Shown here piece after piece: positions 8,249-43,123 of a stretch of DNA of 64,000 bases (positions are counted from its first letter, which is position 1; every line of letters starts with the position of its first letter). The DNA comes from Epithemia pelagica (lineage: Eukaryota; Protista; Bacillariophyta). Where the stretch lies: positions 1,488,001 through 1,552,000 of the forward strand of contig OX337233.1 in assembly GCA_946965045.2 (NCBI GenBank), given 5' to 3'. A program made the position numbers and the translations under genes. Under the pieces are notes generated by a model. The model was given only the letters and a program-made list of their open reading frames with translations, ran no database searches and was not told the origin of the DNA.

Positions 8249-8835
8249 CTGATCAAAGTACTAAAAAAATAAGGATGTGGTTTCCACAAATGCTTGCTGG
8301 GTGCACCAGTGTATTCAATCCATGCAATGAACCGGAGTTGCGTTGGAAGTTTGGTGTGAAGAGAAGCCGAGGCTGCGTTTGGGCGAGCTTTTGTAGGGCT
8401 TCTTCAGTACTACTAGTATGAGAAAAAGAGTACACGTCGCTGAGTTAAAAATAGGTTGCGTTTGTTTGTTGACTTTTGACCACACATTTACGATTACTGA
8501 CAACTGACAGCAATCACATTGTAGTTGCAGACATCAACGGACGGATGATGAGGCTAGGTACTCCTGTTCCTGCTACCTCCCCGTTGAGTACAAGCGAAAT
8601 AGGAGTAGGAGTAATAGGGAAACATTGGCCCTCTAGAATCCAGGAAGTCAGAGACAAGCATCGCAATCTTGGTACGAACTACGAAATCACTGAGAAAGGC
8701 CTAGGTTTAGCGAGCAAAACTGATAAACTTTACTTCGGACGCTTTAGAACAAACCAAACTGATTTTGAAAAACGACTTGTTCCTTCTTATTCATGCAAGT
8801 GCCAGGTCGAACGAAAGCATGTCGGGAACGCGCAA

Positions 8836-15326: not shown

Positions 15327-18300
15327 TCATAGAAGCCCGGCTTCAAAATCTTGATGCTGCGGTGTATCCTCAACAGATCTGTTGGGGCGTCGCATGTATT
15401 CCGGTGTGAATGGTGTGTTGACGGCATTATATTTGTGAGACAGAAGATTTGACACTAGTGGACCAACAGCCGACAAGACGGATGATGCCGTTGATGATCC
15501 AGCCTCACTGAAGGACCTTGGTTGATAGCTGCCATAATTTCGTGCGGTTGCCCCCGGGGAATTGAATGGGACGCTTTCGTCTTCGCCAGTGTTGTTCGCA
15601 AAATGCACCGACCGTATTGACGGGGCTGATCTAACCGATTCGTCTTCCAGTTGGTCATTTTCATGACTCCCAATAGATACGGTACTCACAGATGGTTGGG
15701 TGGAACCATCTCGGTATTGAATAAGCGGCCGGTTTGGTCCCGGAATGTCCTGTTCCACTTCCCTGGTTGCCTTAGTCAGGATTTGGCGTTGTTCCGTTGT
15801 CAAGAAGTCATTACGAAAACTCAATGTTAGAGGCCTCCCTCTCATTTGAATGGCTTTTCGAATACTTTCAAAAGTCCACATCCCGATTTCAACAGAAACT
15901 CCATCAAATGCTACCAGTCTAGCTCCAAGCTTCGGTCTAGTGTTGGTGCCAGAATCATCGAAACCGACGAAACCACAAACCAATACAGCATGGACAGGTA
16001 CAGCAACTTCCAACGTATCCCCTTTCGTTGCATGTGACTTGTCAGTTTTGGCCCACGTCGAAAGTGTTGCAATTCGACGAAGCTCTGCTGCAGTCTTCTC
16101 ACCAGCAACTCTGACACCAGCCAGGTCAGCAGTCATGGCTTCCGTCAACAGTCCCCTCGATTGAGCTGGAGGTGGCGGTACCTTTTGAAACTGTATACCA
16201 ATCTTGCGGCTGTAAAACGTCAAATGATAGACTTGCAATTCTTCCCTTATATTGCTCCCATCAAAACGATGGTTGATCAAAGGAGAACCCATTACATCTA
16301 CTAGTGGACATTCCAGCGCAGATGTGGCATATCCGCTGTTCGTGATTAATGGACGCTGTGGTGAAGGCTTGATTGTATCGTGAAGAACGGGGCTATTCGA
16401 GTTTTGTAGTTCAAGCAATGGGTTTGCTTGGTAAGGTGCATTGTTGCAAGACATATCATCGGGAGGAACGTCATCAGTCGTCTTCATGATTGCTGGAGAA
16501 GTAAGCACCGCATCCCCTATTCGTGCTTCGTATGACGAGGATCCAAGTTCCACGGTACATTTTCCTTCACGAACGGATTCATCGGCATCACCCATTTCGG
16601 CCTGAATGGAAGATACGGTGTCTAGTTCTGTGTCAGAAGTCCCGTGTTCTGAATCCTCTTTGTCAAGTCCAACAACAGAGTGATTCATGCTATTCTCATC
16701 ATTCTCATCATCTGACTCGTCCTCGAAATCATCAAACAAGGATTTCGCTTCCATGTTACCCTTTGAACTGTTCTTGTGAATTGGACCATCGCTTTTGCTT
16801 GGGGTCTTAACTGCAAATTGAGGTGTCTTTTGGGGCGACTTGCCTCGTAACATTTGTTCATGAAGCTGAATACTTGTAGAAACGTGTTCTTCAAGTTCAT
16901 TTAGCAGTTTTTCTTCTTCCATATCCACTTCACCGCCCTCGAATGTGTCATCTGCTACTGCCACCGTGGGCACCGATTCAGATTTTATGCTCGATTCCTG
17001 TTGGTTTGATAGCTGCTGCTGTAAGTTCTTCACCTCTTGTACAAGAACTCGCTTTTCTTTCTTTCGTTGTTTGAGCTGCCGCCGAATATCGCAATTTTCC
17101 TCCCAAAGCTTCAGCAATTGCTGTTCTGCCTTGGACAATCGTTTCTGGAGTTGTTGCATGTTAGCTTGAGCCGCTGTCAAATCCTCAACGGCCGTAGAAG
17201 ACTCTTGCACAGCCAGCTTCCAGTGGGTTTCAAGTGAAAGACAAGCATTGAAGAGAGTGCCAAAGTTTTCCCCTGGTATTTGATTTAGTTGATCTTGCGT
17301 CATTGAATTATCCTGATCACTATCTAGTGACGAAGGTCGTTTCGCAATGTCACTCTTTGTGCCAGGCAAAGCATTGCCGTCCAGGATTTTGATTTGGTCA
17401 TCCGATGAATTATTGATTGCGCAATCTTCTTCCGTAGCATGATGAAAATCCTTTTCACTTCCCCGATTTTCCGCAGTTCCAACTACCCCATTTTCCCCGT
17501 TAACGCTTTCGGTTGGATTCAAAACATCTGTTGGATCAGTCTGCTCAGATCGCTGTTCCATATCTAGAGGTGATGTCTGTGATGCAGCAACGTGTGCCGC
17601 AACAGGGGAATACTCTTGATCTGAGGTCGCCGCATTGGGTGTCGATCCTTCCTTGAAACAGCGTATCTTTCTTTGTAGCATCTGAGCCAACCGAAGTATA
17701 CTTTGATCCAATAGTTGGTTGTTTTTTTGATATTTTTGAGCATCGAGAACTGCTCCGTCTCGATCTATTTCGATCAGTTTGTACCTTTCCAAGGTTGCGT
17801 TTAACTCCTTCAGACGCGCTTTGTACCCGGCAGTTTGATTCATGGATGTTGCCAATTCTGATTGTACCACATCCAGTCGTTGTGTACGCAAGGACTCAAT
17901 CCACGCTTGTGCTTCTTCCGGAGATTTTGCTCGGAGAATAACACGCCTGATGGATCCACGATGAGCATTGACAGCTGCGCGATCACCATCCGAGGTGCTA
18001 GGCCAACATACGGCAAACTCACTATCGGTCTCTCCAAAATCCTCTTCAATCCAGCTGTCTTGAAGATCGAGACAGCCACGAGGTTGGCTATCGTGAGGGC
18101 TGAGAAAATAGTACAAATGAGTGGCGGGTTGCAAAACAAAGAATCGTCGCTTAAACTCCGGGACTTGCGTTCCGAATTTGTACAGGAATCCAGCGGCAGG
18201 GGCATCCCGTGCGAATTTTGCCGCTGTAGGTGAAGTAGGGACCGTATCCGTATGTGGTACCAGACGTTCTTCGTTCCCATTCGGTGCGGGCATCGAAGAT

Positions 18301-18737
18301 GAAATGATGCTGTTTGGTAGTGATTGTCGAATCAATCGCGAGAATCGATTTGTTTGGGAAGCGACATGTTGTGGATGGGTGGACTGGCTATGGCCATCGT
18401 GTCTGGAATGTCCCTGCGGCCGGGGATCTATCATACCAGTCTTTGAGAAGCGATTTCCTCCAGAAGAAGCTTGTGCATCAAGCACGAGCCCAGGCCCACC
18501 TCTTTGAGGAGATAGCATGTGATCAGCCAGAGTCGAAGGATGATGAAAGTTCTTGTTCTTCTTATTCAACGTTGACTGCGAGAGTGACGAAGCAGAGAAA
18601 GAAGCCGATGGTGGAATCTGACGGACTGACCAGTTGTGCTCAAGAGCGGTTCTGTCCGTACCGATGGCATGCTGAGGTCCATGGCTCCACTCCTCGCTGC
18701 GGCTCCCACAGTGGCCGTCGGAGCTACCCCTGTTCAT
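15327..18737 (-). CDS. PH-domain protein with coiled coil and C-terminal PDZ-like segment (1136 aa)
   Basis: AGFLYKFG...FKRRFFVL...LYYF...PRGCLDL...VILRAKSPEEAQAWIESL is a PH domain. Heptad-rich region LQKRLSKAEQQLLKL. RLVAFDGVSVE...IRKAIQMRGRPLTLSFR resembles a PDZ fold. Confidence 0.8.
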   Translation of the reverse strand: MNRGSSDGHCGSRSEEWSHGPQHAIGTDRTALEHNWSVRQIPPSASFSASSLSQSTLNKKNKNFHHPSTLADHMLSPQRGGPGLVLDAQASSGGNRFSKTGMIDPRPQGHSRHDGHSQSTHPQHVASQTNRFSRLIRQSLPNSIISSSMPAPNGNEERLVPHTDTVPTSPTAAKFARDAPAAGFLYKFGTQVPEFKRRFFVLQPATHLYYFLSPHDSQPRGCLDLQDSWIEEDFGETDSEFAVCWPSTSDGDRAAVNAHRGSIRRVILRAKSPEEAQAWIESLRTQRLDVVQSELATSMNQTAGYKARLKELNATLERYKLIEIDRDGAVLDAQKYQKNNQLLDQSILRLAQMLQRKIRCFKEGSTPNAATSDQEYSPVAAHVAASQTSPLDMEQRSEQTDPTDVLNPTESVNGENGVVGTAENRGSEKDFHHATEEDCAINNSSDDQIKILDGNALPGTKSDIAKRPSSLDSDQDNSMTQDQLNQIPGENFGTLFNACLSLETHWKLAVQESSTAVEDLTAAQANMQQLQKRLSKAEQQLLKLWEENCDIRRQLKQRKKEKRVLVQEVKNLQQQLSNQQESSIKSESVPTVAVADDTFEGGEVDMEEEKLLNELEEHVSTSIQLHEQMLRGKSPQKTPQFAVKTPSKSDGPIHKNSSKGNMEAKSLFDDFEDESDDENDENSMNHSVVGLDKEDSEHGTSDTELDTVSSIQAEMGDADESVREGKCTVELGSSSYEARIGDAVLTSPAIMKTTDDVPPDDMSCNNAPYQANPLLELQNSNSPVLHDTIKPSPQRPLITNSGYATSALECPLVDVMGSPLINHRFDGSNIREELQVYHLTFYSRKIGIQFQKVPPPPAQSRGLLTEAMTADLAGVRVAGEKTAAELRRIATLSTWAKTDKSHATKGDTLEVAVPVHAVLVCGFVGFDDSGTNTRPKLGARLVAFDGVSVEIGMWTFESIRKAIQMRGRPLTLSFRNDFLTTEQRQILTKATREVEQDIPGPNRPLIQYRDGSTQPSVSTVSIGSHENDQLEDESVRSAPSIRSVHFANNTGEDESVPFNSPGATARNYGSYQPRSFSEAGSSTASSVLSAVGPLVSNLLSHKYNAVNTPFTPEYMRRPNRSVEDTPQHQDFEAGLL

Positions 18738-18879
18738 CAGGGAAGAGTCCTTTTTATTTCGAACCCTGCGGATGGATTCTACCTCAACTCAAGAATATGT
18801 CCACCAATGCGAGCAACAGAAGGAGAAGAAGAAGTGTCCACGTGAAAATATTATTTGTCTTGAGTGCCTTGTCATGGTG

Positions 18880-18932
18880 GCAGTTTGTCCCTCGCCCCCG
18901 AATGATGAATCGTGGGAAGAATAATGGGGGGC
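18880..18932. repeat. 53-bp exact direct repeat, copy 1 (copy 2 at 21414-21466)
   Basis: GCAGTTTGTCCCTCGCCCCCGAATGATGAATCGTGGGAAGAATAATGGGGGGC is identical at both positions; flanks differ. Confidence 0.95.
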
Positions 18933-19552
18933 ATGAATTAGGTAGACCGCTTCGCGATAAGGGGCTGTGAGTTTTCGAGTTCTGAAATCGAACTACTCCT
19001 AGGAGTAACTACTCCTACATAGGAGTAGTCTGGTATGGAGATAGTTTAGTAAGTGCACAGTTTACCCCAAATTCCATTCACTCAAACTAGTAGAGATTTA
19101 TATCTGGAAATACCATTTTGATGCGATTCAATCATTATAAACGCACAGACCCTTGGATCGATCTACGGCGGTCGTATTACAGGGCATGCACTTGTTGGAT
19201 CGTTTCGCCGACGAATTATCATATCACGGAATCACGCGTCGCACAAACAAAGAGCATGATGTTACTGTCGATACGTTCTGGGGATTGTCCCTGGATCTAC
19301 ACGTCTTTGGGCCGTGGAAACCCATCTAGCGCAAGGATGATCCGTCGCTTACAAACAACAATAGCAACAACAAAGTTCATCGAAAGCAACACTACAAGGG
19401 ACCACGAGGGACGTTTCCTCTCAACGGATTGCAAGTCTTGCAAAAACGGATCATTGACAAGACTCGGGACTCTTTGGTGATCCCAATGTGATACCTATAG
19501 TTTCTTGTTGGATAGTTTCACGTAAAAATGCAAAAGCATTCCTTCAAACTGC

Positions 19553-21235
19553 TCATTGGTTCTCCGCTAACCATACCCGAATGGTCTCTTGCCATGATTT
19601 CAATGGGCGCAAGACATGAATCCTTGTGCTACCCCACAGTGTCTTCAATGTAGCGGCGGGGATCAGTTTTCCGCGTGTCCATTGAAGATCGACATCCAGA
19701 GAACCTTCAAGAAACTGCATTTTATCCTTCGACTTGTAATTTTCTTCATTATCTGGGGAAGCAAGGTAAATGGTTAAGATTTGGGTATCAGGGATCTTCA
19801 TTTGTTCACACCGAAGGTCATACAATGCCCGTACTGTCATTGGGTGCGTTGTATTCCAGGTGCATTGAAAGGCAATGATAGGTCGAGACATATCGGAACT
19901 CGTGCACAAGAAATCGACAAGGGGAAAATTGGTTCTTGTTGGCGCGATAATCATATCGGGCTGCGACAAGTTTTCTCCGATGGTGAATGTGCGCCTTATC
20001 GACTTCTTTGTTATCTTGAACTGAACCCAAGAAGACCCTCCAACTTCACACGACTGCCATTCATGTGCTGTTCCGCGAGACAACAATTCCATTGCGGCAT
20101 TTTCTAGCATCTTGCCTGACAAGTCAATCAGTTCTCTATCCAAACGGTGCAACACACCTTGCATCTTTTCAACAGTTGATAGGACCCGAAGCTTGTTCAT
20201 CACTGCGTCTTCCACCGCCAAACTTGTGTACTCAAGAGTCTTTGTCGAAAAGTCATCGCGCGTTTCTCCTTTGTCCCATTTATGATCATAGCACACGAGA
20301 TACCCGCTGACTGTGCTCCCGTCGTTGTTGTCTTCGTCAACGTCCAGAGCAATCGAGGACACTATTCTTAACGAGATATGTTGCAAACGACTGACGAGTT
20401 TTTCCTCGGCATCGTCGTCCTCTCCCAAGATGTTGCGAATGATCCCACCAAATAATTTGTACCGACTCACGAATTCATCAAAATTGATCGAGACCTTCGA
20501 ATGGCAAACAACGGCCCACATTTCAGCAAAGGACCACGGCCAAAAATAGAATCTTGTGGTACGTCGTTTTGAGTACTCTTTGATCCTCTTCTCATAGGGA
20601 GACAGGGTTGAGAGGCTTGGTATGAAGACTTCGAGTGGAGATCTTTCCGAGTTACCCCCGGGTTCGAAAAAGTAGAGGGTTCTACTCAAGGCCGTGCTAA
20701 GTTGAATGATATGGTCGTGCGAGGTCGTCCAGACATACTCCGCCGCATCGGATAGGTCGATAAGATAAACTCGTGTGTTGACTTGACGAATGACAAAATC
20801 ATACTTCCGTTCTGCTCGGTAGCAAAGAAGCTGCTTCAGTGCAAAGAGTTGGAACAAACTTTTGCCCGTGCCAGCATTTCCAATCAAACAAACACGGAAT
20901 TTTTTCCGTGTCCATGCTTCATAGACGCGACGGTACAGTTCGTTGTAGCCACTTCGAACATACAATCTTGATGGTTCGCAGGTAAGTTCCAAGAACTCCT
21001 GATAATTCGTCATCGGTAGGCTGTAACAATAGAGTGGTCGTAAAGACGACCCAAAGTTTTGCGAAAGAGTGACAATTTCTAGTTGCGAGGACCGAAGAGC
21101 TCTCAAGTTATTGGTGCCGATGGGGTTCAACTGGAACGTTCCGTTCACAGACAGAAGATTATTCGTAAGACTTTCCAGCTTCATCGCAATCGCATGCTTG
21201 CTCTTCATACCACTATCATTCATCGCATCTTGCAT
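19553..21235 (-). CDS. Crinkler/RHS-family P-loop NTPase plus restriction-endonuclease-like domain (CR1)
   Basis: LYVR, Walker A CLIGNAGTGKS, YFFEP, LSP, WPWS..E, FGGIIR, GKMLE, PTRTNFPLVD...AFQCT...H match the motif order of CRN/RHS NTPase-REase proteins. Intronless. The conserved part starts near ATG 21013. Confidence 0.8.
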   Translation of the reverse strand: MQDAMNDSGMKSKHAIAMKLESLTNNLLSVNGTFQLNPIGTNNLRALRSSQLEIVTLSQNFGSSLRPLYCYSLPMTNYQEFLELTCEPSRLYVRSGYNELYRRVYEAWTRKKFRVCLIGNAGTGKSLFQLFALKQLLCYRAERKYDFVIRQVNTRVYLIDLSDAAEYVWTTSHDHIIQLSTALSRTLYFFEPGGNSERSPLEVFIPSLSTLSPYEKRIKEYSKRRTTRFYFWPWSFAEMWAVVCHSKVSINFDEFVSRYKLFGGIIRNILGEDDDAEEKLVSRLQHISLRIVSSIALDVDEDNNDGSTVSGYLVCYDHKWDKGETRDDFSTKTLEYTSLAVEDAVMNKLRVLSTVEKMQGVLHRLDRELIDLSGKMLENAAMELLSRGTAHEWQSCEVGGSSWVQFKITKKSIRRTFTIGENLSQPDMIIAPTRTNFPLVDFLCTSSDMSRPIIAFQCTWNTTHPMTVRALYDLRCEQMKIPDTQILTIYLASPDNEENYKSKDKMQFLEGSLDVDLQWTRGKLIPAATLKTLWGSTRIHVLRPLKSWQETIRVWLAENQ

Positions 21236-21413
21236 TGTTGTACATCATCTTTCATCTCGGCCATGGTCACCCGTCGTCGCTGGCTGTTTTGATCGGAGCA
21301 TGAAAGTCTGACATCTTACAATTCTATGGTGCGTTTCACTCGTCTCTACAAAATGATCGGGAGAATTTACTGACCGTAACCGGGGAGAAGCGGTGTCCCT
21401 CATTCTTTTGGTC

Positions 21414-21466
21414 GCAGTTTGTCCCTCGCCCCCGAATGATGAATCGTGGGAAGAATAATGGGGGGC
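21414..21466. repeat. 53-bp exact direct repeat, copy 2
   Basis: Identical to 18880-18932. Confidence 0.95.
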
Positions 21467-22281
21467 TCTCTGATGGCACGTGTCATAGAGATGATGCGTT
21501 TCAGGACATGTAGGCAAGGTTCCTCGGTCGACGTAAAGTGACGTATTAGACGTTGGACGTGACGTGACCAGGGTCAGCATGTCACGTCTCCCACAATCTA
21601 TTGACGTAGACGCGACGTTGAAGAAAAGAAATCTACCTTTAGTATAATGCCACCCATGCCACTCCTTACGTTCATTTTAAGTGTGTTTTAGCACTCCTGA
21701 TGTAACAATTGACAAGGTAACAGGTACCTAGCAAGCATGCAGATGCATTTGTCCCCCCACCCCGTGATCTCTAACACAACACTGAGATGTCCGGCGGGAC
21801 TCACTAGCCAGTCAACAACATACAAACGTTACACTAGAAGACATTCCTCTGTCTATTTGGTGTCATCAAGCATAGTAAGGCAAAGGAAGAGGCAATAAGG
21901 ATGAAGGATGGAGGGGACTTCAGCACCAGCAATACGGAGTAGCATCAATAGCTTCAACTATGTGTATTAATGCAAGTATCTATCGTAGTCATATCCGCTG
22001 TCAACGTCTCTCAGCGTCTCTCAACGTCTACGTCTACGTCCACCGTCAATCCGTCACGTCTACGAAAATCCATTGACGTGACGTACGAGGAACCTTGATG
22101 TAGGAGCGTGCGGGAAATTTTTGGCCCTCCCCCAACAGCCCCCAGCCCCAGGCACCTCCACCGCTTCGTTGTGGATACACTACTGACCAAATGTTCGCCA
22201 CACATGAATAATGATAAACTCTAATGCATTTCATGTTAGACAAGGATACAAACTGAGTCTTTCTCATGCAAACATAGCAAC

Positions 22282-23376: not shown

Positions 23377-23870
23377 CCTGCTTGTTCATTTCTAGTGGCG
23401 ATGAAGATTGCTCACTTGTCGCAATGGAGGATCTTTCGTTGCTTGCTAAAGAACCCATTCAAGGTGCAAGGCGAGTGGACACTCATCCAACAGCATCCAA
23501 CAGCAAAGAGGAGAAGCCTCTGTGCACATTTTCCCGCCTTGTCCGATGTTTTGCTCGGCTGGCGCAGATGATTATGGACTGCTCGTTCCCTTGTTTTTGC
23601 CGTTCAAACGCGAGCCAGCCGAAGTATGCTTACCCATTATGTTGGTTTGATTCCGTTGCTTGCTTCTCACGTGGAGAGTAATCGTTTCTTGATATTATAT
23701 ACTCCTATTAGTTAGACTTTTGATTATCGAAAATCGACACATCTCTATTAGGAGTAGGAGTATGCTCTATCATCCTGAGACTATCTAACCACAACCAATT
23801 AGTTAATCGGTGCTGATTCTGCTACCGACCTATTTTCTCAGGTTCCAAACCATCAGGATCACAATCACTA

Positions 23871-25424: not shown

Positions 25425-25931
25425 AAGAGAACCTAGTCAAATGCCTTAGTAGTAGGTTTCGTCGGACCAAGGGCGCGGTGTTGAAAATGTGTTTCAAGTT
25501 GAAATGGTAGAACAGCGTGACAGGCAGGGTGAGGGTGACTTGTTCTTTTTTCTTTTTGTTGGCACGTTGCCGTTGGCACTTCGAGATTTTAAATTTCCAA
25601 TTGCCTAATGCATGCAACCGCCAGGTTGTGAATCAGTACTTCTTGAAACGACCCTTACGCGACTAAAAATGACTGAGGTGGCCAATCGTTTTGAGCCAAC
25701 CATAAGGTGAAGTATAGGTTTTGTTTCGACTATACAAGCGAATTGTAGCGTTTTCTACTTCTAGAGTAAAGCTCAAATGAAATCCCTAGCGCTAAACGAT
25801 CTCCGAAACTCTGACCCGGATATTCCTGAATTCCGTGGCTTCTCGTCTTCGTTGCAGACAACTTGTCAACCCAAGCAAAAAAAATAAAGCGCATCATGAG
25901 GCAACCGAGATCGAGGGCTTCCCATAGAAGG

Positions 25932-27221
25932 ATGCATTACCTCGAGTGGACATGCATCGTCTCTTCCGTTCTATGCTCAAAAGGTGCCCTGAGTTTCGTG
26001 TTCCCGTCATTGACAAATGGGCGCAAAGTGCGGATCGCATCTAACCGGCCAGCACGGTTGTTTGACATCACACAGCCTTCTGGCCGAAGAAAACGGCTTT
26101 TGGCGCCGTTTAGCCGTCCATCTCGAGACCCTTCGCTATGTTATGTTTCGAGGACAGCTGAAATGAATGATGAGCTATCTCACGTTGAAGTAAGCTGGGA
26201 GCAAGTCGTCCTTCCCAGCGAACTTGAGGTGGAGTGCCTGACGGACGAAAGCGAACCCTGTCTTATACAGGGGCAAGACCCTGGTGAAAAGTTTTCCGAA
26301 CGAATTATCTTAGGAAGTGCAGCTCTGGCCATGTCGACTTTGCTAGTTTTTATGGTTCTCGGCTCTGGAGACTGGAGGTATTATTTGGCGGGTGGTATAT
26401 GTGCTGCAGCATCACATATCGTCCCAGTCCCTGTCGATGTAGTGAAAACACGAAAGCAAGTTGATAGCAACCTTGCTGATTCTGGTTTGGTCCAAGCTAC
26501 TCGACATATAGTCCGGAATGAGGGTTGGCGTTCGTTGTTTGTGGGCGCGGCTCCGACGTTCTGGGGATACTTTCTGGAAGGGTCAATCAAATTTGGTGTG
26601 TACGAGTTTTTGAAACCTTGGATCAAGACCATTATACCGATGCAATATGTGGCCTTCATTGTTTCAGCCACAGTCTCAGGACTTGCGGCTTCTATTGTTT
26701 TATCTCCCATGGAAGCTCTCAGAATTCGGTTGGTAGCTGAACCACAATATGCCAAGCTGGGATGGGTCCGCGGCGGGATTTCGATGATTGAACAAGAAGG
26801 AGCTTCTGGCTTTGCGAAAGGCTTAATACCCATGATGTGCAAGCAAGTTCCGTATACAATCACCAAGAATGTATCTTTTGATCTTTTTACGAAACTGGCG
26901 TACGGTCTTCTGAAATCATCGTCTGCATCGAGTACGACCAAGTTTCTCATTCCCTTGGTATCGGCGGCTCTTTCAAGTGTACTTTCTTGTGTGAGCAGCC
27001 AACCAGGTGATATGTTGTTGAGTTTGGTAAATGCTCATGGAGGGTCAAGACGGACAGGCGAAATTGCACGTGATATCATGCGTTCAGATCGTGGCATTAG
27101 AGGTTTCTTTGTGGGTATGAAAACAAGATTCATACATGTTGGAATAATTGTGACGATGCAGCTCTTGATCTATGACTTTGCAAAGAGAATGTGTGGAATA
27201 GCAGCAACTGGATCAGTTTGA
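25932..27221 (+). CDS. Mitochondrial-carrier-family protein, phosphate-carrier-like, with N-terminal presequence
   Basis: PVDVVKTR, GYFLEGSIKFGVYE, PMEALRIR, KQVPYTITK and SQPGDMLL match PiC/Mir1-type carriers. About 140-aa extension starting MHYLEWTCIVSSVLCSKGALS-FVF. Confidence 0.85.
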   Translation: MHYLEWTCIVSSVLCSKGALSFVFPSLTNGRKVRIASNRPARLFDITQPSGRRKRLLAPFSRPSRDPSLCYVSRTAEMNDELSHVEVSWEQVVLPSELEVECLTDESEPCLIQGQDPGEKFSERIILGSAALAMSTLLVFMVLGSGDWRYYLAGGICAAASHIVPVPVDVVKTRKQVDSNLADSGLVQATRHIVRNEGWRSLFVGAAPTFWGYFLEGSIKFGVYEFLKPWIKTIIPMQYVAFIVSATVSGLAASIVLSPMEALRIRLVAEPQYAKLGWVRGGISMIEQEGASGFAKGLIPMMCKQVPYTITKNVSFDLFTKLAYGLLKSSSASSTTKFLIPLVSAALSSVLSCVSSQPGDMLLSLVNAHGGSRRTGEIARDIMRSDRGIRGFFVGMKTRFIHVGIIVTMQLLIYDFAKRMCGIAATGSV

Positions 27222-27428
27222 TGGTAGTTGAGCTTTATTTCGTTCATCGAAATGAGTTTCGTATTGGTGACAATCTCCCAAATATAAGAGAGGTGTTGGC
27301 AATTGGCAACGAGACCAGGGTGTTGAAGTTCGACTTTACTGTTTTAAGTAAAAATTTAATTCTCATCTGATTTTCCTTAACTTCAACACCCTGAACGAGA
27401 ACGAGACACAACACTGAAAAGTTGGCGC
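27150..27428. repeat. Direct repeat, copy 1: last 72 bp of the carrier CDS plus 3' flank (copy 2 at 42939-43123)
   Basis: First 66 bp identical, then a few substitutions and indels. Homology resumes after the MITE (AACAC/ATG.AAAGTTGGCGC). Confidence 0.9.
27316..27393. mobile_element. 78-bp hAT-like MITE
   Basis: Perfect 15-bp TIRs (CAGGGTGTTGAAGTT / AACTTCAACACCCTG). AACGAGAC precedes it and AACGAG-AACGAGAC follows it. Absent from the paralogous copy near 43100. Confidence 0.8.
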
Positions 27429-28376: not shown

Positions 28377-28490
28377 GGGTGTAATTTCGCACCTCTCATG
28401 TGAAAATTCACATCTCATGTGAATTCACATCTTCTTCACATCCTCTTCACATCATCTTCACATCCTCTTCACATCGTCTAACATCATGTT
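28377..28490. repeat. Left subterminal array of the Harbinger-like element (ATGTGA..TCACAT palindromes plus 11-bp CACATCNTCTT units)
   Basis: Two palindromes followed by about five CACATC(T/C/A/G)TCTT units. Confidence 0.85.
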
Positions 28491-29006
28491 CGAATGACCT
28501 TCTTGTCTTATAGATCGTGGAACAAGAAGCATAATCAATTGATGTTACTTCGTTTAGGCACTAGTGTAGGTTTTCATCATCCCATCGTCTTGTCGTCTTC
28601 TTATCCTCTCGTCTTGTCGCCTTGTCGTCCTCTGCTCGTCTTGGCAGGCTCCTGGTGGTCAAACTTCTTGTGGGAGTAATGGGATCTTGCACGCTGCGAT
28701 GGCTCCTTCGTTTTACAATGGACGCTATCGATGGAGATGACACACATGGGGATCGGTTCTTCTTCTTGGTTCACCATTTGATTGTTTGTGTGGTGGTCGA
28801 TGAACAAAAGTAGAGGTGCGGCACTCGTTTCCGTGTGCACGCGCGTTTGGCAACAAACGAAAAAACGCGATACAAGCCACGATTCTCAATCTTGCTACAA
28901 TAGACAAAGGAAATACAAAGATATAAACGATTCTCGTTATTCGTCGTATACGCACACTACTTTAGGCAGGTTGGAATAATAGCATCAACCGCAACAGAAA
29001 TGGACC

Positions 29007-29441
29007 TCAGTTGTCGAGGGGGTCTTCAACGTGCCTCCAGCGGGCTTTGTGGGGTTTCTTGGTTTGCTGCTTTCGAATGGCTTCAGTCAGCATGTCTTCG
29101 AACCTTTTTGCCATTGGCTTGGCATCGTGGATGTTGCATTTGGCCAGCTCAATGCACAGAACATGCATCTGGCTGGCAATGTCCGGATGCTGGTCCAAAA
29201 CTGCCGTCTCATAGGTGAAATCGTCATCTTCTTTCCACTCGCTGATGCTGTCCTTGTTGACCTGGGTGCGAATCAGCATAGCCTCTGGCTGACTGACCAA
29301 CACCCACACCTTGACTTCAGTTTTCTTCCCTTCAACGTTGCACCATCCATGCCCACCCTTGTACGTTCCTTTCAGGAACCGAATACGCTCTCCTTTTCGG
29401 TCCTCCCATGCCTGGGTCAGTGCAAAAGGCTTCGGCGCCAT
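29007..29441 (-). CDS. Transposon-borne small protein with KOW-like motif (144 aa)
   Basis: ATG ORF divergent from the transposase. KGERIRFLKGTYKGGHG resembles a KOW motif. Confidence 0.55.
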   Translation of the reverse strand: MAPKPFALTQAWEDRKGERIRFLKGTYKGGHGWCNVEGKKTEVKVWVLVSQPEAMLIRTQVNKDSISEWKEDDDFTYETAVLDQHPDIASQMHVLCIELAKCNIHDAKPMAKRFEDMLTEAIRKQQTKKPHKARWRHVEDPLDN

Positions 29442-29734
29442 CGTTCGTTTGGTTGCTGGTTGTTGTTGCTGGCTTGTTGTTGTTGCTAGCTGGTTGCTGC
29501 TGGCGGTCTGGTTGCTGCTGCTGTTGTTGTATTGGATGTCGTTCTCGCGTCAATTTGTTTGGTTGCTGCGTACCCCCACGCATTTGACATCTGCTCAATA
29601 ATATGAGAACACGAGAATTTTTTGGCAAGAGTAGGATTTCTGTGGGGGAGTGCGCCATCGGAAAACCCTCACAAAACACAGAAGAGAAAGCATTCTCGTT
29701 ATCAAGCAAAGCAGAGCGCAACCAGTCAGGTACG

Positions 29735-30667
29735 ATGATCATCTTAACACCTAATGAGATTGCCCGTGAAGGCCTAGAGCTCTGTAGTGTTGTGCATGGC
29801 ATCGAGTGTAGCTTAGCACAGATCTACAAGGATTTTCGATCTCTCTATGGGTCTGACCCACTCACCGTGGCTAACATATGGTATGATATGAATACCACTG
29901 CTATTTCTGAAGCTTCTCTTTCTGAGAAAGAGAAGCTTCATGGACTAAAGATGTTTATGCTTGCGATGTACTTTTTGTGGAACTATCCACGGAACACAAC
30001 AACCCTGGCACGTACATTCAAGGTGAATGAGAAGTATGCCTCGGGGAGAACACTATGGAAGTGGATCGCTTGGATCCAGGCTCTAAAAGGTACGAAAATT
30101 GTTTGGGAGAAGAACCGTGCTCTCGATCGTTATGACAGGCCGCTCCCGAAATTTGCGATATCTGTTGACGGGGTTGATTGTAAAATCAATGAGCCAAAGC
30201 ATCCGACGAAGCCTGTCGATCGCAAGTACTACTCACACAAGTTCAACCACGGAGCGTTGAAGTATGAGCTTGCAATCGACATCTTCAAGCCCAAACTGGT
30301 GTGGATAAACGGCCCGTTTCAAGCGTCAAAACACAACATTACTGTGTTTCGAGACCACGGACTCTTGGAGAAAATGAAAACCGACCATCCGGGAAGATTT
30401 GTGGTGGCTGATCGAGGATACCAGACGAGTCGTCCGGACGAGATTGGAATTATGAGCACCCCAAATGACATGGACCCCAAGTTGCTGAAGAACTTCAAGA
30501 CTCGTGTTCGCCAGAGGCATGAGAGCTTCAACGGACGAATCAAGTTCTTCAAATGCCTCAGTGAGACGTTCCGCCATACCCAGGAGAAACACAAAATCGC
30601 TTTCGAAGCGGTTTGCGTCATTGTCCAGTATCAGATGGACAATGGAGCACCAATCTTTGACGCTTAG
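29735..30667 (+). CDS. Harbinger/ISL2EU-type DDE transposase (DDE_Tnp_4)
   Basis: ISVDGVDC, YYSHKFNHGALKYE, WINGPF, VADRGY, RQRHESFNGRIKFF. D, D and E are all present. First ATG at 29735. Confidence 0.85.
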   Translation: MIILTPNEIAREGLELCSVVHGIECSLAQIYKDFRSLYGSDPLTVANIWYDMNTTAISEASLSEKEKLHGLKMFMLAMYFLWNYPRNTTTLARTFKVNEKYASGRTLWKWIAWIQALKGTKIVWEKNRALDRYDRPLPKFAISVDGVDCKINEPKHPTKPVDRKYYSHKFNHGALKYELAIDIFKPKLVWINGPFQASKHNITVFRDHGLLEKMKTDHPGRFVVADRGYQTSRPDEIGIMSTPNDMDPKLLKNFKTRVRQRHESFNGRIKFFKCLSETFRHTQEKHKIAFEAVCVIVQYQMDNGAPIFDA

Positions 30668-31329
30668 ACGTATTGGAAGTTTGACCACTGCATAATAATT
30701 GATAATTGATATAAGTACTAATTCACCATTATTGCCTACCACGCTATAGGTCTGTTGCTTTGTGCTGTTGTCTTTTCAAAAGTGGCTGAGACCTCACTAC
30801 AATTGGCTCTCGATCTCATACTAGTCTCAGCTCACACATGCAGTCTCATGAATCTAGTTGTGAACCGTGGAGTCTTCCCCTCCACTAGTAGGGGCAATGG
30901 GAGTAGGGGCAGCGGGAGTGTGAGCACGACGACGAGAAGCCAGACGGTTTGCAATATCCACGTCACGCCGAGAAGTGCTGGATTTGAGGCCAACGCGACG
31001 GCCCCCAGATTTGGCAATTGTCCAATAGGCATACCAGGTCAGTGAATCGTACGTCTCCCCTTGGAGGTGAAACGTGTGAGGGATGGCGGTGACTTCGGTA
31101 GGGACATAAGTCTCGTCGTTCGCAAGCGTGAAGTTGTCTAAATAAATCTCCTCGCTGAACTTCAAGAGGTAGTTCATCAACTCGCGACTTTTTCCTGCGG
31201 CCTTGATGTCACTTCTCAGACCATTGATGGTTTCCAGTGTGACCGTCTGCGCACTGGCTTCCATGTCAATCACATAATCTTCGGCATTGTTACGGGCATG
31301 ATGGTCCTGGGATGGTCCAGTAAGTAAGA

Positions 31330-31929
31330 TGACAAGCTGGAAGGAAGGGAGGTTAGATAGGGTGTAACAAAACACACACGATGGAGACGGTATAGTTACG
31401 ATAGAATAGAGGGTTTCGAATAGTTGATGATAAAATATTGTGATTACATGAAGTGATTATCTAGATTGGATCCTTTCGATCCCAGGTTCCCATTAAGGTG
31501 ATCCTGGATCTTGGATCGAGGTGTAAAAGGCTTCTAGACGGAAAAGATCGCCGTCTAGGGTCATCGGCACAGGCCTATCTCACCTAGAGGTGCATATATA
31601 AGTTAGATGTAATAGTTCGCCGTAGACTGTCCGTTGCGGCTCTTTACGCGCGGTTGATAAGCCTCAATCCGCGATTAGCGCGATACGGTTAAGTCCAGCG
31701 GATCTTGGAGAATATAAATAACATAGCCTATGAGACATAGGACTAGTTCGATCGTGGAGTATACATAAGTTAGGAGTGAATAGATCTTCGTGACTCAATC
31801 GTGCCTAATCTAGATTCGTACAGGAATCTAGGCTATATGCGATTGATCTGCCGCGTACTTTCCGCGACTCTTCATGACTATAGAACTACCTATTGGGGAA
31901 TATAGCCAATATAGGTGTTCTAGGTATTA
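31330..31929 (-). repeat. 3' LTR (600 bp)
   Basis: About 4 substitutions against 37598-38197 by eye. Sense-strand termini TA...CA. Confidence 0.95.
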
Positions 31930-34900: not shown

Positions 34901-35887
34901 CTTTAGCTCCTCCATCTATAGCGGGGACTTCTGACCACATAGTATCGGTAGCAACTGGCTCATGACGTCGAGGGACGTTGAAGGCCGAGAACCATGACTT
35001 GAAATGCTTCCTGAATGGAATACGGTACATGTTGCGAAACCACTGAGTAGAGTTCTCTAGTGTTTTCTTGACGCGATCTAGGGGCAGCCATAGGAGATAG
35101 GGCCTTAGCTTCTCATAGTCATAGCTGTTGAGACGCCTATTCCTGGGATTGACTGTAGCATTTAGCTCGTCATCGGTATCCATAGGTTGACCGGGATGTG
35201 TTCTTGCCTGATAGGCCTCTAGGACACGAGCGACACAGTCCACATGTAGGTAGTGGCCGGTCTCGTTGTACCTAGGATCGAAGGAGTTGAACTCCTCTAG
35301 TTCTTCAGGGGACTCCATAGCTTCGTGATATACATCTTCTTCGACATTAATTTCATGATCTAAGACACCAGGTTCCCATAAGGCATCACTAGTCAACACT
35401 ACTGTAGGTAGCGTATCTAGTTCTTCATCCGTAGGAGGGTGCATAGGCATCCTAATTAATCCTTGCGGCATTGAAAAGGAATTACCCATTGGTCCACTGT
35501 AACCATGCGTTGCTGATGGCCAGGGATCATAGCCGACTTGTCGTCAACCGTATTGCCAAAATGGGACAGTTGTCCTGTAGAGTGCGCAGTACTCCCCTTT
35601 CCATAGTAGGCGTACTGATTCATGATGAGTACGATTGGTCCACGTGTTGTCTGAACGACACCTGCACACGTCACAATGGGAACGTCTTCCATATGGCTGT
35701 CGCCAATTCCCGTGATGTCAGCACTTCTATCCGTGTAACTCAGAACGCGTACGTCTTCACCAGCGAGTCCTCCATTCGCTCCGCCATCAATGAGCGAGCC
35801 AGGCAGAGTGGTAGATGCTGCGGCTTGCGTGCACCTGTAAGTAACACTTGCCATGTTGATGCTCCGTGTGGAGCCACTTCCCGACAC
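31920..35887 (-). pseudogene. pol: Copia pol (protease, integrase, RT, RNase H), disrupted
   Basis: Protease LIDGGAN; integrase ATDTM...ISDNA...QNFAE; RT QADVGNAYL, LCGLKTSG, YVDDLL; RNase H FDAN...SEFIA, GDNKS. Frameshift near 35470 and TGA in DL*YTLRMLG at 32234-32232. Confidence 0.9.
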
Positions 35888-36042
35888 GCGTTGGTAGATT
35901 GCGCCGGTACTGCTGATGACTCGCTCGCTGTTATCAGATCGAGCGTTGGATAAGAGATTATTAAGGAGTGTCTGGTTGCTGGCTTGACTTGGCGGGATCG
36001 CGAACTGGGTCGACGGACTTGGTGGTGTAGTTGTCGTGGTAG

Positions 36043-37438: not shown

Positions 37439-37597
37439 AGGCTTGTCGTAGTAAGTCTCGCGTAGAATCAGTCGTCACCGTCGCGTCGTGTCGTATGGTA
37501 GTATAGGATGGATAAGAGGATGGATTAGAGATAGGTCCAACCTTCCAACTTGGAAAAGACAACTCCGCGGGTGATCAAGCCGATGAGATTGTTAATC

Positions 37598-40272: not shown

Positions 40273-40324
40273 TAACTACTTTCTATAGTCCTTCATTCAC
40301 CCATTTAAGACTCTCATTTTTGTT

Positions 40325-40550
40325 GTTTTCACATCGTCTTCACATTTCACATCGTCTTCACATCTTCTTCACATCTTCTTCACATCTTCTTCACATCTTC
40401 TTCACATCTTCTTCACATCGTTGATGTGAATTTTCACATATTCATGTGAATTTTCACATGAAGTGTGAATATTCCTATCGCCACTGTTTTCTTCACATCA
40501 CAGATGCGAAATTTCAAATCGTCGATGTGAAATTTCACATGAAGTTTCCC
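40325..40550. repeat. Right subterminal array of the Harbinger-like element
   Basis: About six tandem CACATCTTCTT units followed by three ATGTGAAWWTTCACAT palindromes. Confidence 0.9.
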
Positions 40551-41120: not shown

Positions 41121-42563
41121 ATGGAGATTAGCGTATCTCAAGAGTACGCGTTTGTGCCTCAAGATAAGAATGAATCATTCGACGACGTCGGGTTTGGTCC
41201 TTTTGTGGTCCAACGGAAGCATCTGATCGACGAAATCATTGACTATGCCACACCAAAAAAATCGGTTCACATCAACGGATGCAGGGGATCCGGGAAGACC
41301 ACTGTGCTCAACCAGATCGGGCTAAATTTGATTGGTCAGAACAAGACAGTATTCTTGTTCGAGAGCGCTACTGCACTCAGTAGAGAATCCGTGATTCGAT
41401 GGGTGAAATCGCTGATTCTTGCCAGAGAAGAGGTTTGGCTTTTGATTGACGAGACCCAGAACAATGTGGAAGCAGAGCTGTTTACTTTGCTGTTAAAGAA
41501 CACGAAAGGCCACAAAATCACTACAATCGGAGCCGGTGTACCGGAGTACCAGTCTATGAGTCAGAGGTTCAAGAAAAGGATTGACACCGATCAATTGTTC
41601 TTGACGTCTAACCAAATGCTTGTTGATGAAGGAGTCGTTCAATACTTCAAGAGTATTGCATCGGGAATCAATGGAGCTGCAGACACCGACCAAGTCGACC
41701 TCCTAATTGAGCATTTACGCAACTATGTAGGTGGGCACGTGTATCCGCTTATGTGGTTGTCTGAGAAACTCGTGCCAATGCTCGCTGCCAAAAGTTATTC
41801 AGCCGATGAAGTCATCAACTACCTCGGTTCCTCTTCGTTTCGTCAGCAAGAAGACTTCGCTGCGATGGTGGACCGAATCCTTCCTACAGTTGCAGAAACA
41901 GACATACGTCCTCTTTTGTACAAAGTTCCGGATCCCAACGCCCTCTATGATCTCCGGCGCAAGGGCTTTTGCGACAAAGAAAACAAAATCATATCACAGT
42001 TGCTGTTTCAGGAGTTCATTGCGAAACTGTCTCCAAATGCAACGCTTCCGAGTCGACTGGTGGCTGGTGTCGATGGCATCCGCCAACTGCTACAATTTGC
42101 TTTGCCACACCTTGATTGGACGCGGTACATGGCATTTGGAGGTCCTGTTGAAGATGCGTTGACGCTTGAGTTGTTGATCATTCTTGCTGGAGTTTCCCAC
42201 CTTACGACTCGCCTATTTAACCCCAAGCTTATCAATGCCGGCACTGCATCAAGGAAGCCAGATCTTTATTTCAACACCTCAGTTGACTCTTTTGTTGAGT
42301 GTGTCCTTACGACAGCAAACAACGCGACTGAAGTTGCCAAACTCGATGAACACATTGCTCGGTTCTATGCCACGACTCCAGGAGGCACTGAATATTACCA
42401 GATTGGGCACTCAAATTTTGCTATCCTGAACTACCAACAATACGGAGACCAGCCTATGCTTCCTGGCACTCGTTTTCGAGGGCACGTGTTTGACACAAGA
42501 GTCTTCACTTTCCTTATGGGCACAAAGGAGGTCTTTCTGGGAAGTGCACGCATCGGTCCATAA
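41121..42563 (+). CDS. Crinkler-like AAA/P-loop NTPase with PD-(D/E)xK-like C-terminal domain (CR2)
   Basis: Walker A HINGCRGSGKTT, Walker B WLLIDE, YVGGHVY, and C-terminal EDAL...RKPDLYFN...FVECV. Intronless. Likely ATG at 41121. Confidence 0.7.
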   Translation: MEISVSQEYAFVPQDKNESFDDVGFGPFVVQRKHLIDEIIDYATPKKSVHINGCRGSGKTTVLNQIGLNLIGQNKTVFLFESATALSRESVIRWVKSLILAREEVWLLIDETQNNVEAELFTLLLKNTKGHKITTIGAGVPEYQSMSQRFKKRIDTDQLFLTSNQMLVDEGVVQYFKSIASGINGAADTDQVDLLIEHLRNYVGGHVYPLMWLSEKLVPMLAAKSYSADEVINYLGSSSFRQQEDFAAMVDRILPTVAETDIRPLLYKVPDPNALYDLRRKGFCDKENKIISQLLFQEFIAKLSPNATLPSRLVAGVDGIRQLLQFALPHLDWTRYMAFGGPVEDALTLELLIILAGVSHLTTRLFNPKLINAGTASRKPDLYFNTSVDSFVECVLTTANNATEVAKLDEHIARFYATTPGGTEYYQIGHSNFAILNYQQYGDQPMLPGTRFRGHVFDTRVFTFLMGTKEVFLGSARIGP

Positions 42564-42938
42564 AAAAGCGTGGGCAGAATGACCAGATGCACCCGCGTCC
42601 GATCGTTTTGTGTATTCGTAGTAGCAACAAAAGGCTAATTAGAGTCTTCGGCGCAGAGCGCCTTGGAAGACTGTTTTACATGGCTTTGTCCGCGTTGGCC
42701 ACGGTTGGAAGAAAAAGCAACCAAAAAACTACTGGGGGCAGGGCCTGCAGTCCTTTCTTGATTCGGTAGGTCAGGGACACCTTCGAAATTTGTAGCCAAG
42801 GAACAATTTTGTTGTTGACCCTAATAGGCAACAATGCCTTTTGACGGTAAGTTCAATTGGTGAAGTTGACGACCACCTATGTACTAGGGGCATCGGTTTT
42901 ATGATAGGTAACCTAGCAAAACGAATCCGCAAATTACG

Positions 42939-43123
42939 GTGACGATGCAGCTCTTGATCTATGACTTTGCAAAGAGAATGTGTGGAATAGCAGCAACTGG
43001 ATCAATTTGATGGTTGTTGAGTATTATTTCGTTCATCGAAATGAGTTTCGTTTGGTTGACAATCTCCCAAGTAGTATATCCGTAAGATCGTGTTGGCAAC
43101 GAGACAACAATGGAAAGTTGGCG
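42939..43123. repeat. Direct repeat, copy 2 (orphan 3' end of the carrier gene)
   Basis: Matches 27150-27428 minus the MITE and encodes VTMQLLIYDFAKRMCGIAATGSI-stop. Confidence 0.9.

What the first reader, a model, noticed from the sequence alone, without database searches (positions are those of the whole stretch)
18880..21466. Crinkler-like NTPase-nuclease gene sits alone in a 2.5-kb block flanked by a perfect 53-bp direct repeat
Seen: identical non-microsatellite 53-mers at 18880-18932 and 21414-21466 enclose 2481 bp holding only the intronless CR1 gene. I found no TIRs, LTRs, poly(A) tail or N-terminal effector header. Established: CRN/RHS NTPase+REase modules have been proposed to derive from transposons (Zhang, Aravind and colleagues). 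Inference: this is a recent insertion of a minimal self-mobile NTPase-REase unit that leaves a very long target-site duplication, for example through widely staggered nicks. The same pattern recurs for CR2.
Basis: partly seen in the sequence, partly recalled or inferred. Interest (0 to 1): 0.8.

Follow-up and report, generated by a model that had tools for sequence, protein, structure and literature searches.

The report
Inserted NTPase gene between duplicated host DNA
A single 560-residue ATPase gene of the Crinkler/RHS type sits in a diatom chromosome as a 2.5-kb insert bracketed by a perfect 53-bp duplication of the surrounding DNA; about half of the related genes checked are bracketed the same way, by duplications of 50 bp to more than 0.7 kb, which no classical transposon makes.

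Summary
Identical 53-mers lie at 18880-18932 and 21414-21466 (58 nt with one mismatch). They occur only twice in the 60.5-Mb genome and enclose one intact, single-copy 560-aa ORF.

The protein has an AAA+/STAND-type P-loop NTPase domain. Its C-terminal domain has restriction-endonuclease-like topology and motifs. It is tied to the Crinkler/RHS clade only by sub-threshold and transitive evidence.

The pattern recurs. Five of 10 CR-type genes examined are flanked by locus-specific direct repeats, against 1 of 23 other genes (p=0.005). In at least three loci the repeat is host-derived: it carries the 3' end of a DNA methylase gene, the 3' end of a mitochondrial-carrier gene, or the start of a NUDIX domain.

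Repeat length runs from about 50 nt to 0.7 kb or more, and identity from 82 to 100%. No conserved element ends, poly(A) tail or donor copy were found. The youngest paralogue pair (97% identical) has no flanking repeats.

Best reading: a recent cassette insertion with a target duplication made by break or replication repair. Self-mobilisation is unproven. Other first-stage notes report the same pattern elsewhere in this genome.

The parts
18875..18932 (+). Left copy of the direct repeat. It is perfect from 18880 (53 nt), or 58 nt with one mismatch at 18879. It lies 143 nt upstream of the ATG of the PH-domain gene.
21409..21466 (+). Right copy of the direct repeat. It lies 178 nt upstream of the CR1 ATG, in the same orientation relative to that gene as the left copy is to the PH-domain gene.
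18933..21413 (-). Inserted cassette. It is single-copy in the genome and consists of a 178-nt 5' flank, the ORF and a 620-nt 3' flank.
19553..21235 (-). CR1 ORF, 560 aa. Walker A is GNAGTGKS at residues 119-126. Residues about 30-350 are an AAA+/STAND NTPase. Residues about 375-545 have REase-like alpha-beta-beta-beta-alpha-beta topology with conserved E378, D441 and Q457-x-T459-W460.
18935..18953 (+). Left arm of a near-terminal imperfect inverted repeat (16 of 19 matches). Its significance is uncertain and it is not a family feature.
21387..21405 (-). Right arm of the near-terminal inverted repeat.
15327..18737 (-). Host PH-domain gene whose upstream region received the insertion.
27143..27284 (+). 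Left copy of the direct repeat that brackets CR2. It contains the last 79 nt of the coding sequence of a mitochondrial-carrier gene (25896-27221).
42932..43073 (+). Right copy of the CR2 repeat (92-95% identical; only two copies in the genome).
41121..42563 (+). CR2, an nSTAND_NTPase5-family gene. The longer ORF from 40863 begins inside a dispersed repeat and is probably not coding there.

Best explanation
The 2.5-kb block is a recent insertion of a gene-sized cassette (ORF plus a few hundred bases on each side) into the upstream region of a PH-domain gene. The cassette encodes a header-less Crinkler/RHS-type AAA+/STAND NTPase with a C-terminal REase-like domain.

The insertion duplicated 53-58 bp of the target, so one copy of that segment now lies upstream of each gene. 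This is one event in a recurrent process in this diatom: cassettes of this and related NTPase families land in gene ends and promoters, bracketed by duplicated host DNA of very variable length.

Because length varies so much and the cassette ends are not conserved, I infer that the duplication is made by host break or replication repair, not by a transposase with a fixed stagger. Possible routes are two offset single-strand breaks, or a small tandem duplication whose junction captured the cassette.

In a compact genome, selection would favour events whose duplication keeps both neighbouring genes intact.

Shown: the repeats, their uniqueness, their host origin, their enrichment, and the protein's NTPase fold. 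Inferred: the direction of the event (insertion), its recency, the repair-based mechanism, and any role of the encoded protein.
For: - The 53/53 repeat has only two copies in the genome.
- The block is single-copy. The nearest paralogue has dS about 2.75, while zero differences in 53 nt bounds repeat divergence below about 6%. No donor copy of matching age exists.
- Flanking repeats occur at the C4, C8 and C2b paralogue loci and at CR2, plus a weak one at C16. All are two-copy and locus-specific.
- The repeats carry host coding sequence: DNA methylase motif-X region, the carrier C-terminus, and the start of a NUDIX domain.
- Enrichment is 5 of 10 CR-type genes against 1 of 23 others, p=0.0054. 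In the 64-kb window the only long-range direct repeats are those of CR1, CR2 and the Copia LTRs.
- Repeat identity of 82-100% implies events of different ages.
- Unit ends are not conserved, and the 5' flank included varies from 8 to 91 to 178 nt.
- Base composition of the block matches its surroundings.
Against: - No empty site was seen, so insertion is inferred, not shown.
- The youngest dispersed pair (C2a and C7, 97% identical) has no flanking repeat, so duplication is not obligatory.
- A diatom homologue on a metagenome contig (L040) also has none.
- The 16/19 near-terminal inverted repeat at CR1 (p about 0.001) could point to a transposase-type end.
- The sample is small: 10 CR-type genes and about 150 kb of control DNA.
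- Why repair-based capture should favour these gene families is unexplained.
Confidence: 0.5

Rival explanations
1. Autonomous element. The encoded NTPase-nuclease itself cuts the target with widely spaced nicks and moves its own gene by cut-and-paste, leaving a long target-site duplication.
For: - The pattern is specific to NTPase(-nuclease) cassettes.
- Repeat-flanked copies have no donor of matching age, as expected for cut-and-paste.
- CR1 has a near-terminal inverted repeat with p about 0.001.
- The NTPase domain resembles AAA+ regulators, including Tn7-type TnsC, at Z 7.6-8.3. These scores are tied with many other AAA+ proteins.
- Intact ORFs evolve with dN/dS of about 0.5.
Against: - Duplication length varies more than ten-fold.
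- There are no shared termini, and no inverted repeats at five other loci.
- The unit boundaries differ relative to the ORF.
- CR2 and C2b belong to other NTPase families.
- The REase-like motif lacks the canonical lysine, and no fold or HMM match was obtained.
- The 97%-identical pair shows copy-type spread without repeats.
Confidence: 0.2
2. Retroposition. The cassette is a cDNA copy of an intron-less mRNA, inserted by a reverse transcriptase (target-primed, or cDNA captured at a break). The variable duplication comes from variable second-strand cleavage.
For: - Units are transcript-sized: the ORF plus 8-178 nt upstream and 176-620 nt downstream.
- Variable target duplications are typical of target-primed insertion (established knowledge of LINE-mediated retrocopies).
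- A recently active Copia element with 99.3%-identical LTRs lies in the same window, so reverse transcriptase is available.
Against: - There is no poly(A) or A-rich tail at any cassette 3' end.
- No donor gene of matching identity exists for CR1 or C8, yet retroposition leaves the donor in place.
- Duplications of 350 nt to 0.7 kb or more are far beyond the usual range.
- Intron loss cannot be tested, because the whole family is intron-less.
Confidence: 0.1
3. No insertion at all. The repeats are remnants of local tandem segmental duplications of [host segment + CR gene], followed by deletions or unequal crossing-over, or short templated repair patches copied across the gene.
For: - The contig-5 locus is exactly such a tandem duplication of an epimerase gene plus a CR gene, with the left unit decayed.
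- At C2b and C5 the non-functional host copy carries a large internal deletion.
Against: - For CR1 this needs a duplication plus a base-precise deletion, leaving a perfect 53-mer with sharp edges and nothing else duplicated.
- The paralogues lie on different chromosomes, so the family does disperse.
- Each flanked locus has a different host repeat.
Confidence: 0.12
4. Assembly artefact: a chimeric or mis-joined read placed the block here.
For: Nothing specific. The block is single-copy and read data could not be inspected.
Against: - Artefacts do not create clean flanking duplications.
- The same architecture recurs at several independent loci with diverged repeats.
- An identical 560-aa protein (P0069) is recorded on a 1,997,458-base ENA contig. 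Whether that contig is an assembly independent of this genome was not established.
Confidence: 0.03

Closest known systems
Crinkler/RHS (CR) C-terminal NTPase + REase modules (Zhang, Burroughs, Vidal, Iyer and Aravind 2016, as summarised in PMC5289972)
   Same: - The architecture is a P-loop NTPase followed by a helical region and a C-terminal REase-like domain.
- Distant members of the same HMM family hit Pfam RHSP (PF07999) at 19-23 bits.
- The nearest ESM-feature clusters for residues 370-560 are euglenozoan (RHSP) and oomycete proteins.
- A proposed link between this module and transposable elements is reported in PMC5289972.
   Different: - There is no N-terminal Ubl/LFLAK header and no signal peptide.
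- CR1 itself matches no Pfam model.
- The REase-like motif reads D...QxT in place of D...(D/E)xK.
- The organism is a free-living diatom, not a parasite.
- Flanking host duplications have not, to my knowledge, been described for these genes.
Cut-and-paste DNA transposons (for example the Harbinger in this window; Mutator; casposons)
   Same: A discrete unit flanked by a duplication of the target. CR1 has a weak near-terminal inverted repeat.
   Different: - Known target-site duplications are fixed and short, 2-15 bp (established knowledge). Here they are 50 nt to 0.7 kb or more and variable.
- There is no DDE or Cas1 enzyme, no conserved termini and no multi-copy family.
LINE-mediated processed retrocopies
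   Same: A gene-sized, intron-less unit with a variable-length target duplication.
   Different: There is no poly(A) tail and no donor copy, and the duplications reach hundreds of bases.
Small tandem duplications with inserted DNA at the junction (replication-restart or microhomology-mediated template switching; offset-nick repair)
   Same: A variable-length local duplication bracketing foreign sequence, with no sequence-specific ends.
   Different: Junction insertions described in that literature are usually short (from my own knowledge). Here the insert is always a whole 2-2.5 kb gene of particular families.
Tn7-type TnsA (REase-fold nuclease) + TnsC (AAA+ regulator)
   Same: An REase-like domain combined with an AAA+ domain. 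TnsC structures are among the fold matches at Z 7.6-8.3.
   Different: - Those matches are tied with Clp, ORC, RFC, CED-4 and NLR proteins.
- There is no TnsB-like DDE partner.
- Tn7 makes a 5-bp duplication (established knowledge).

Membership tests
Crinkler/RHS NTPase-REase module | P-loop NTPase domain with Walker A and Walker B motifs | tested here: met
   - GNAGTGKS at residues 119-126 and a conserved D160.
- The model has pLDDT 89.
- AAA+/STAND matches reach Z 8-9.2.
Crinkler/RHS NTPase-REase module | Sequence membership in the RHSP/CR NTPase family (Pfam PF07999 or equivalent) | tested here: inconclusive
   - CR1 and 38 relatives have no PF07999 hit.
- Four distant relatives found with the family profile hit PF07999 at 19-23 bits, below the cut-off of 25.
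Crinkler/RHS NTPase-REase module | C-terminal restriction-endonuclease fold with a catalytic D...(D/E)xK | tested here: inconclusive
   - The alpha-beta-beta-beta-alpha-beta order and conserved E378, D441 and Q457xT459 fit the fold, but the lysine is absent.
- The domain folded alone gave pLDDT 64 and no match above Z 3.
- The PDB profile search gave nothing.
- ESM features point to RHS and oomycete clusters.
Crinkler effector (secreted CRN) | N-terminal header (Ubl domain with an LFLAK-type motif) and a secretion signal | tested here: not met
   The N-terminus is hydrophilic and has no LFLAK or HVLV motif. This is judged by eye only; no signal-peptide predictor was available.
Class II (cut-and-paste) DNA transposon | Terminal inverted repeats shared by family members | tested here: not met
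   A 16/19 inverted repeat occurs at CR1 only. There is none at five other loci, and the motif is absent next to paralogues.
Class II (cut-and-paste) DNA transposon | Target-site duplication of fixed, short length | tested here: not met
   The duplications measure 53-58, about 51-90, 142, about 350 and 733 nt or more.
Class II (cut-and-paste) DNA transposon | A recognised transposase domain | tested here: not met
   No Pfam transposase domain was found.
Processed retrocopy | 3' poly(A) tract next to the downstream duplication | tested here: not met
   There is no A or T run at the 3' ends of six cassettes.
Processed retrocopy | Parent gene present elsewhere in the genome | tested here: not met
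   The best paralogue of CR1 is 53% identical at protein level, with dS of about 2.75.
LTR retrotransposon | Long terminal repeats that belong to the element, plus gag/pol genes | tested here: not met
   The repeats are host-derived, and the single ORF is an NTPase.
nSTAND_NTPase5 (Pfam PF25199), for CR2 | Match above the gathering score | tested here: met
   CR2 scores 36.5 bits against a cut-off of 34. CR1 does not match.

The most novel reading that the evidence does not exclude
Header-less Crinkler/RHS and STAND-type NTPase(-nuclease) genes of diatoms form a previously undescribed class of mobile gene cassettes. They relocate as single-gene units and insert with long, variable duplications of host DNA (50 bp to about 1 kb or more). 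The insertion might be triggered by their own nuclease at offset breaks in promoters and gene ends, where R-loops or stalled forks are common. The duplication would preserve both neighbouring genes.
Probability: 0.2. Interest if true: 0.85.

Novelty: new variant of a known kind. Interest (0 to 1): 0.6.

Why it matters
If these cassettes really move, they would show what a eukaryotic 'transposon-to-toxin' intermediate looks like. The Crinkler/RHS NTPase-nuclease module has been proposed to derive from transposons, but it has not been seen behaving as a mobile unit in a eukaryote.

They would also add an insertion mode with long, variable target duplications that lies outside current transposon classifications.

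Even under the more conservative repair-based reading, the pattern has uses. It explains how fast-evolving conflict genes spread through a very compact genome without destroying their neighbours. It also gives a simple, datable signature (the flanking repeat) for tracing gene gain in diatoms.

Tried and rejected
- **Dispersed repeat or promoter module.** Rejected; there are two copies in 60.5 Mb.
- **Multi-copy element.** Rejected; the block is single-copy.
- **TIR motif as a family signature.** Rejected. The two near-matches on contigs 5 and 10 belong to an unrelated 2.5-kb repeat.
- **TAGGAGT palindromes inside the block as element signals.** Rejected; the motif is common across the window.
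- **Viral origin.** No relatives in IMG/VR. The Pox_A32 hit is only E=0.014.
- **Foreign composition.** Rejected; the GC profile is flat.
- **Fold test of the REase domain.** The domain folded alone was too uncertain (pLDDT 64) and gave no match. The whole-protein searches were filled by the NTPase domain.
- **Naming the family through named homologues.** Two large protein searches returned only unnamed diatom or metagenome proteins. Cluster look-up gave no names. PADLOC gave nothing for CR1.
- **Empty-site search.** The one metagenome scan gave a single usable contig from another diatom, without flanking repeats.
- **Bacterial promoter and terminator scan.** Not meaningful for a eukaryote.
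- **Zhang et al. 2016.** Not held in the paper library, so it is cited only through PMC5289972.
Full report
**1.
- The window carries two identical 53-mers at 18880-18932 and 21414-21466. With one G/C mismatch the repeat is 58 nt long, from 18875 and from 21409.
- A search of the whole 60.5-Mb, 23-contig assembly finds these two copies and no others.
- Between the copies lie 2,481 nt with one long ORF, 19553-21235 on the minus strand, 560 aa.
- At DNA level the block is unique. The only other matches are 67-74% identical stretches inside the ORFs of paralogues on contig 5.
- Base composition is the same as in the surroundings.
- There are no LTRs and no A or T runs at the ends.
Bases 18935-18953 and the reverse complement of 21387-21405 match at 16 of 19 positions. 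These arms lie 2 nt from the left end of the block and 3 nt (58-nt repeat) or 8 nt (53-nt repeat) from its right end. Only 4 of 5000 random end pairs from this genome do as well.
- That inverted repeat is not found at five other repeat-flanked loci and its motif does not accompany any paralogue. I record it as unexplained, not as a terminal inverted repeat.

**2. What the gene is.**
- Homologues are unnamed proteins from diatom assemblies and transcriptomes. Nitzschia and Cylindrotheca appear in source names, and identity is at most 58%. The genome is therefore a pennate diatom.
- No Pfam model matches CR1 or 38 aligned relatives.
- An AlphaFold model built on that alignment is confident, with pLDDT 89 and pTM 0.86.
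- Residues about 30-350 match AAA+/STAND NTPases: ClpA Z 9.2, archaeal PAB2304 8.7, a wheat resistosome 8.7, CED-4 8.3, TnsC 8.3. These are essentially tied.
- The C-terminal 180 residues have the alpha-beta-beta-beta-alpha-beta order of the restriction-endonuclease fold. E378, D441 and Q457-x-T459-W460 are conserved at the expected places, but there is no lysine in the last motif.
- Folded alone, this domain was too uncertain (pLDDT 64) and matched nothing. A PDB profile search was also blank.
- Two indirect links lead to the Crinkler/RHS clade. First, a profile search of 1.84 billion representatives found 2,142 relatives, and four distant ones hit Pfam RHSP (PF07999) at 19-23 bits against a cut-off of 25. 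Second, language-model features of residues 370-560 are closest to euglenozoan (RHSP) and oomycete clusters.
- There is no N-terminal Crinkler header and no hydrophobic signal.
- 'Crinkler-like NTPase-nuclease' is thus a reasonable but not proven label. The NTPase is shown; the nuclease is inferred.

**3. The pattern recurs and is host-derived.**
- The genome has about ten loci related to CR1. I fetched 10 kb around each and compared each locus with itself.
- Flanking, locus-specific direct repeats were found at the following loci:

| Locus | Repeat | Spacing |
|---|---|---|
| Contig 4 | 51 nt at 84%, longer if indels are allowed | 2,530 nt |
| Contig 8 | about 350 nt at 84% overall, with a 117-nt core at 94% | about 2,485 nt |
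| Contig 2, a third and very distant NTPase family ('C2b') | 69 nt at 96%, plus a second 30-nt pair | 2,611 nt |
| Contig 16 (weak) | 51 nt at 82% | 3,692 nt |

- CR2 in the window (41121-42563) is flanked by a 133-142-nt repeat at 92-95%. It is a Pfam nSTAND_NTPase5 protein with no detectable similarity to CR1.
- Each repeat has just two copies in the genome.
- Where a neighbour can be recognised, the repeat is host sequence:
  - The contig-8 repeat contains the end of a C5 DNA-methylase ORF, with an IGNSINV stretch that I read, from my own knowledge of these enzymes, as methylase motif X.
  - The CR2 repeat contains the last 26 codons of a mitochondrial carrier.
  - The C2b repeat contains the start of a NUDIX domain.
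- One copy is always continuous with the intact host gene, and the other is a stranded fragment.
- In all DNA held, 5 of 10 CR-type genes are flanked, against 1 of 23 other genes with enough flank (Fisher p=0.0054). The single exception is an epimerase lying between two CR copies; leaving that locus out gives p=0.0009.
- In the 64-kb window, the only direct repeats more than 800 nt apart are those of CR1, CR2 and the Copia LTRs.
- Other first-stage notes on this genome report further CR cassettes bracketed by repeats of about 55 bp to about 0.95 kb. I did not test those.

**4. What argues against a classical transposon.**
- Duplication length spans 53-58, about 51-90, 142 and about 350 nt. At C2b it is probably 733 nt or more, with a later 590-nt deletion in the dead copy.
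- Cassette ends share no sequence.
- Two recent paralogue pairs define the shared unit:
  - Contig-2 and contig-7 copies are 97% identical (dS 0.02) over 2.03 kb. That is the ORF plus about 90 nt upstream and about 200 nt downstream.
  - Contig-1 and contig-16 copies are 90% identical over 1.9 kb, with only 8 nt upstream of the ATG.
- Neither member of the 97% pair has a significant flanking repeat.
- The contig-5 locus is a plain tandem duplication of an epimerase gene plus a CR gene, whose left unit has decayed.
- The family therefore spreads in more than one way, and a long duplication is frequent but not obligatory.

**5. Age and donor.**
- Zero differences in 53 nt bounds the divergence of the CR1 repeat below about 6% at 95% confidence.
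- The nearest paralogue is saturated at synonymous sites, with dS of about 2.75.
- At contig 8 the repeat differs by 6-16%, while the nearest paralogues are at dS 0.52.
- Repeat-flanked copies therefore have no surviving donor of matching age. This fits relocation (cut-and-paste), loss of the donor, or arrival from another genome. It speaks against simple copy mechanisms such as retroposition.

**6. Most likely mechanism.**
- I take the block to be a recent insertion into the upstream region of the PH-domain gene (15327-18737), with duplication of 53-58 bp of target. One copy now sits 143 nt before the PH-domain ATG and the other 178 nt before the CR1 ATG.
- The cluster of ACGT-core motifs at about 21520-21640, formerly upstream of the PH-domain gene, now lies upstream of CR1. 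That it has any promoter role is inference.
- The variable length of the duplications, their position in promoters and gene ends, and the lack of defined ends fit repair of two offset breaks, or a small tandem duplication whose junction captured the cassette. They fit a fixed-stagger enzyme less well.
- In this compact genome, events that duplicate the gene end or promoter leave both neighbours intact and would be the ones retained.
- The rivals are retroposition (no poly(A), no donor), purely local duplication and deletion (needs base-precise deletions for CR1) and assembly artefact. All three are less likely. On the last point, an identical 560-aa protein is recorded on a 1,997,458-base ENA contig, but I could not establish that this contig is an assembly independent of this genome.

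**7. Limits.**
- The single metagenome scan gave one usable contig.
- As a result, no empty site, no CR2-family paralogues and no random genomic controls beyond about 150 kb could be examined.
- The frameshifted contig-4 paralogue was analysed as two separate pieces and left as it is.

**8. Verdict.**
- Insertion with a long target duplication is well supported.
- The family-wide recurrence is the most interesting result.
- Autonomy and the nick model remain hypotheses.
- I class the finding as a new variant of a known kind, namely a gene insertion with target duplication involving a Crinkler/RHS-type module. There is a modest chance that it represents a new class of mobile cassette.

Noticed in passing
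window 28377-40550, with 31330-38197 inside it: A Harbinger-type element (DDE_Tnp_4 ORF at 29603-30667) carries a nested Copia-type retrotransposon (RVT_2 ORF at 32232-35489). The Copia has 600-nt LTRs that are 99.3% identical, so it inserted recently. Both lie inside the CR2 repeat-bounded block.
   Followed up: partly
window 40713-40980: A 268-nt dispersed repeat with at least 40 copies at 83-98% identity. Elsewhere it is paired with an inverted partner of about 115 nt some 600 nt away, which looks like a MITE. It makes the first 45 or so codons of the long 'CR2' ORF spurious; the real start is probably the ATG at 41121.
   Followed up: partly
L035:3873-5902 and L034:3977-5995 (contigs 2 and 7): Two CR1-family genes on different chromosomes are 96.6% identical over a sharply bounded 2.03-kb unit (dS 0.02, dN 0.03), with no flanking repeats. 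This is either very recent copy-type dispersal or ectopic gene conversion.
   Followed up: partly
L030/L031 (contig 5, 1046500-1060799): A tandem duplication of an NAD-dependent epimerase gene plus a CR gene. In the left unit the epimerase copy has lost 1.2 kb and the CR copy is a fragment. The CR copies are 93% identical, but the host parts only 82-83%.
   Followed up: partly
window 21520-21640 and 22040-22079: A dense cluster of TGACGT/ACGT-core motifs (bZIP-site-like) in the intergenic region just outside the right repeat. It may be the promoter that the insertion separated from the PH-domain gene.
   Followed up: no
window 61548-62316: Two tandem copies of a unit of about 375-386 nt at 99% identity.
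   Followed up: no
window 28402-28501 and 40335-40434: Arrays of an 11-nt unit (TTCACATCNTC) just inside both ends of the Harbinger-type element.
   Followed up: no
L027 and L029 (contig 5 at about 3.55 Mb, contig 10 at about 0.41 Mb): A repeat of 2.5 kb or more, 98% identical between the two loci and unrelated to CR1. It was found only because it contains a chance near-match to the CR1 inverted-repeat motif.
   Followed up: no
window-wide, e.g. 8600-8612, 18995-19026, 23701-23761, 43205-43251: The heptamer TAGGAGT and its complement occur 24 times in 64 kb, against about 8 expected, often in small intergenic clusters. It may be a regulatory motif of this diatom.
   Followed up: no
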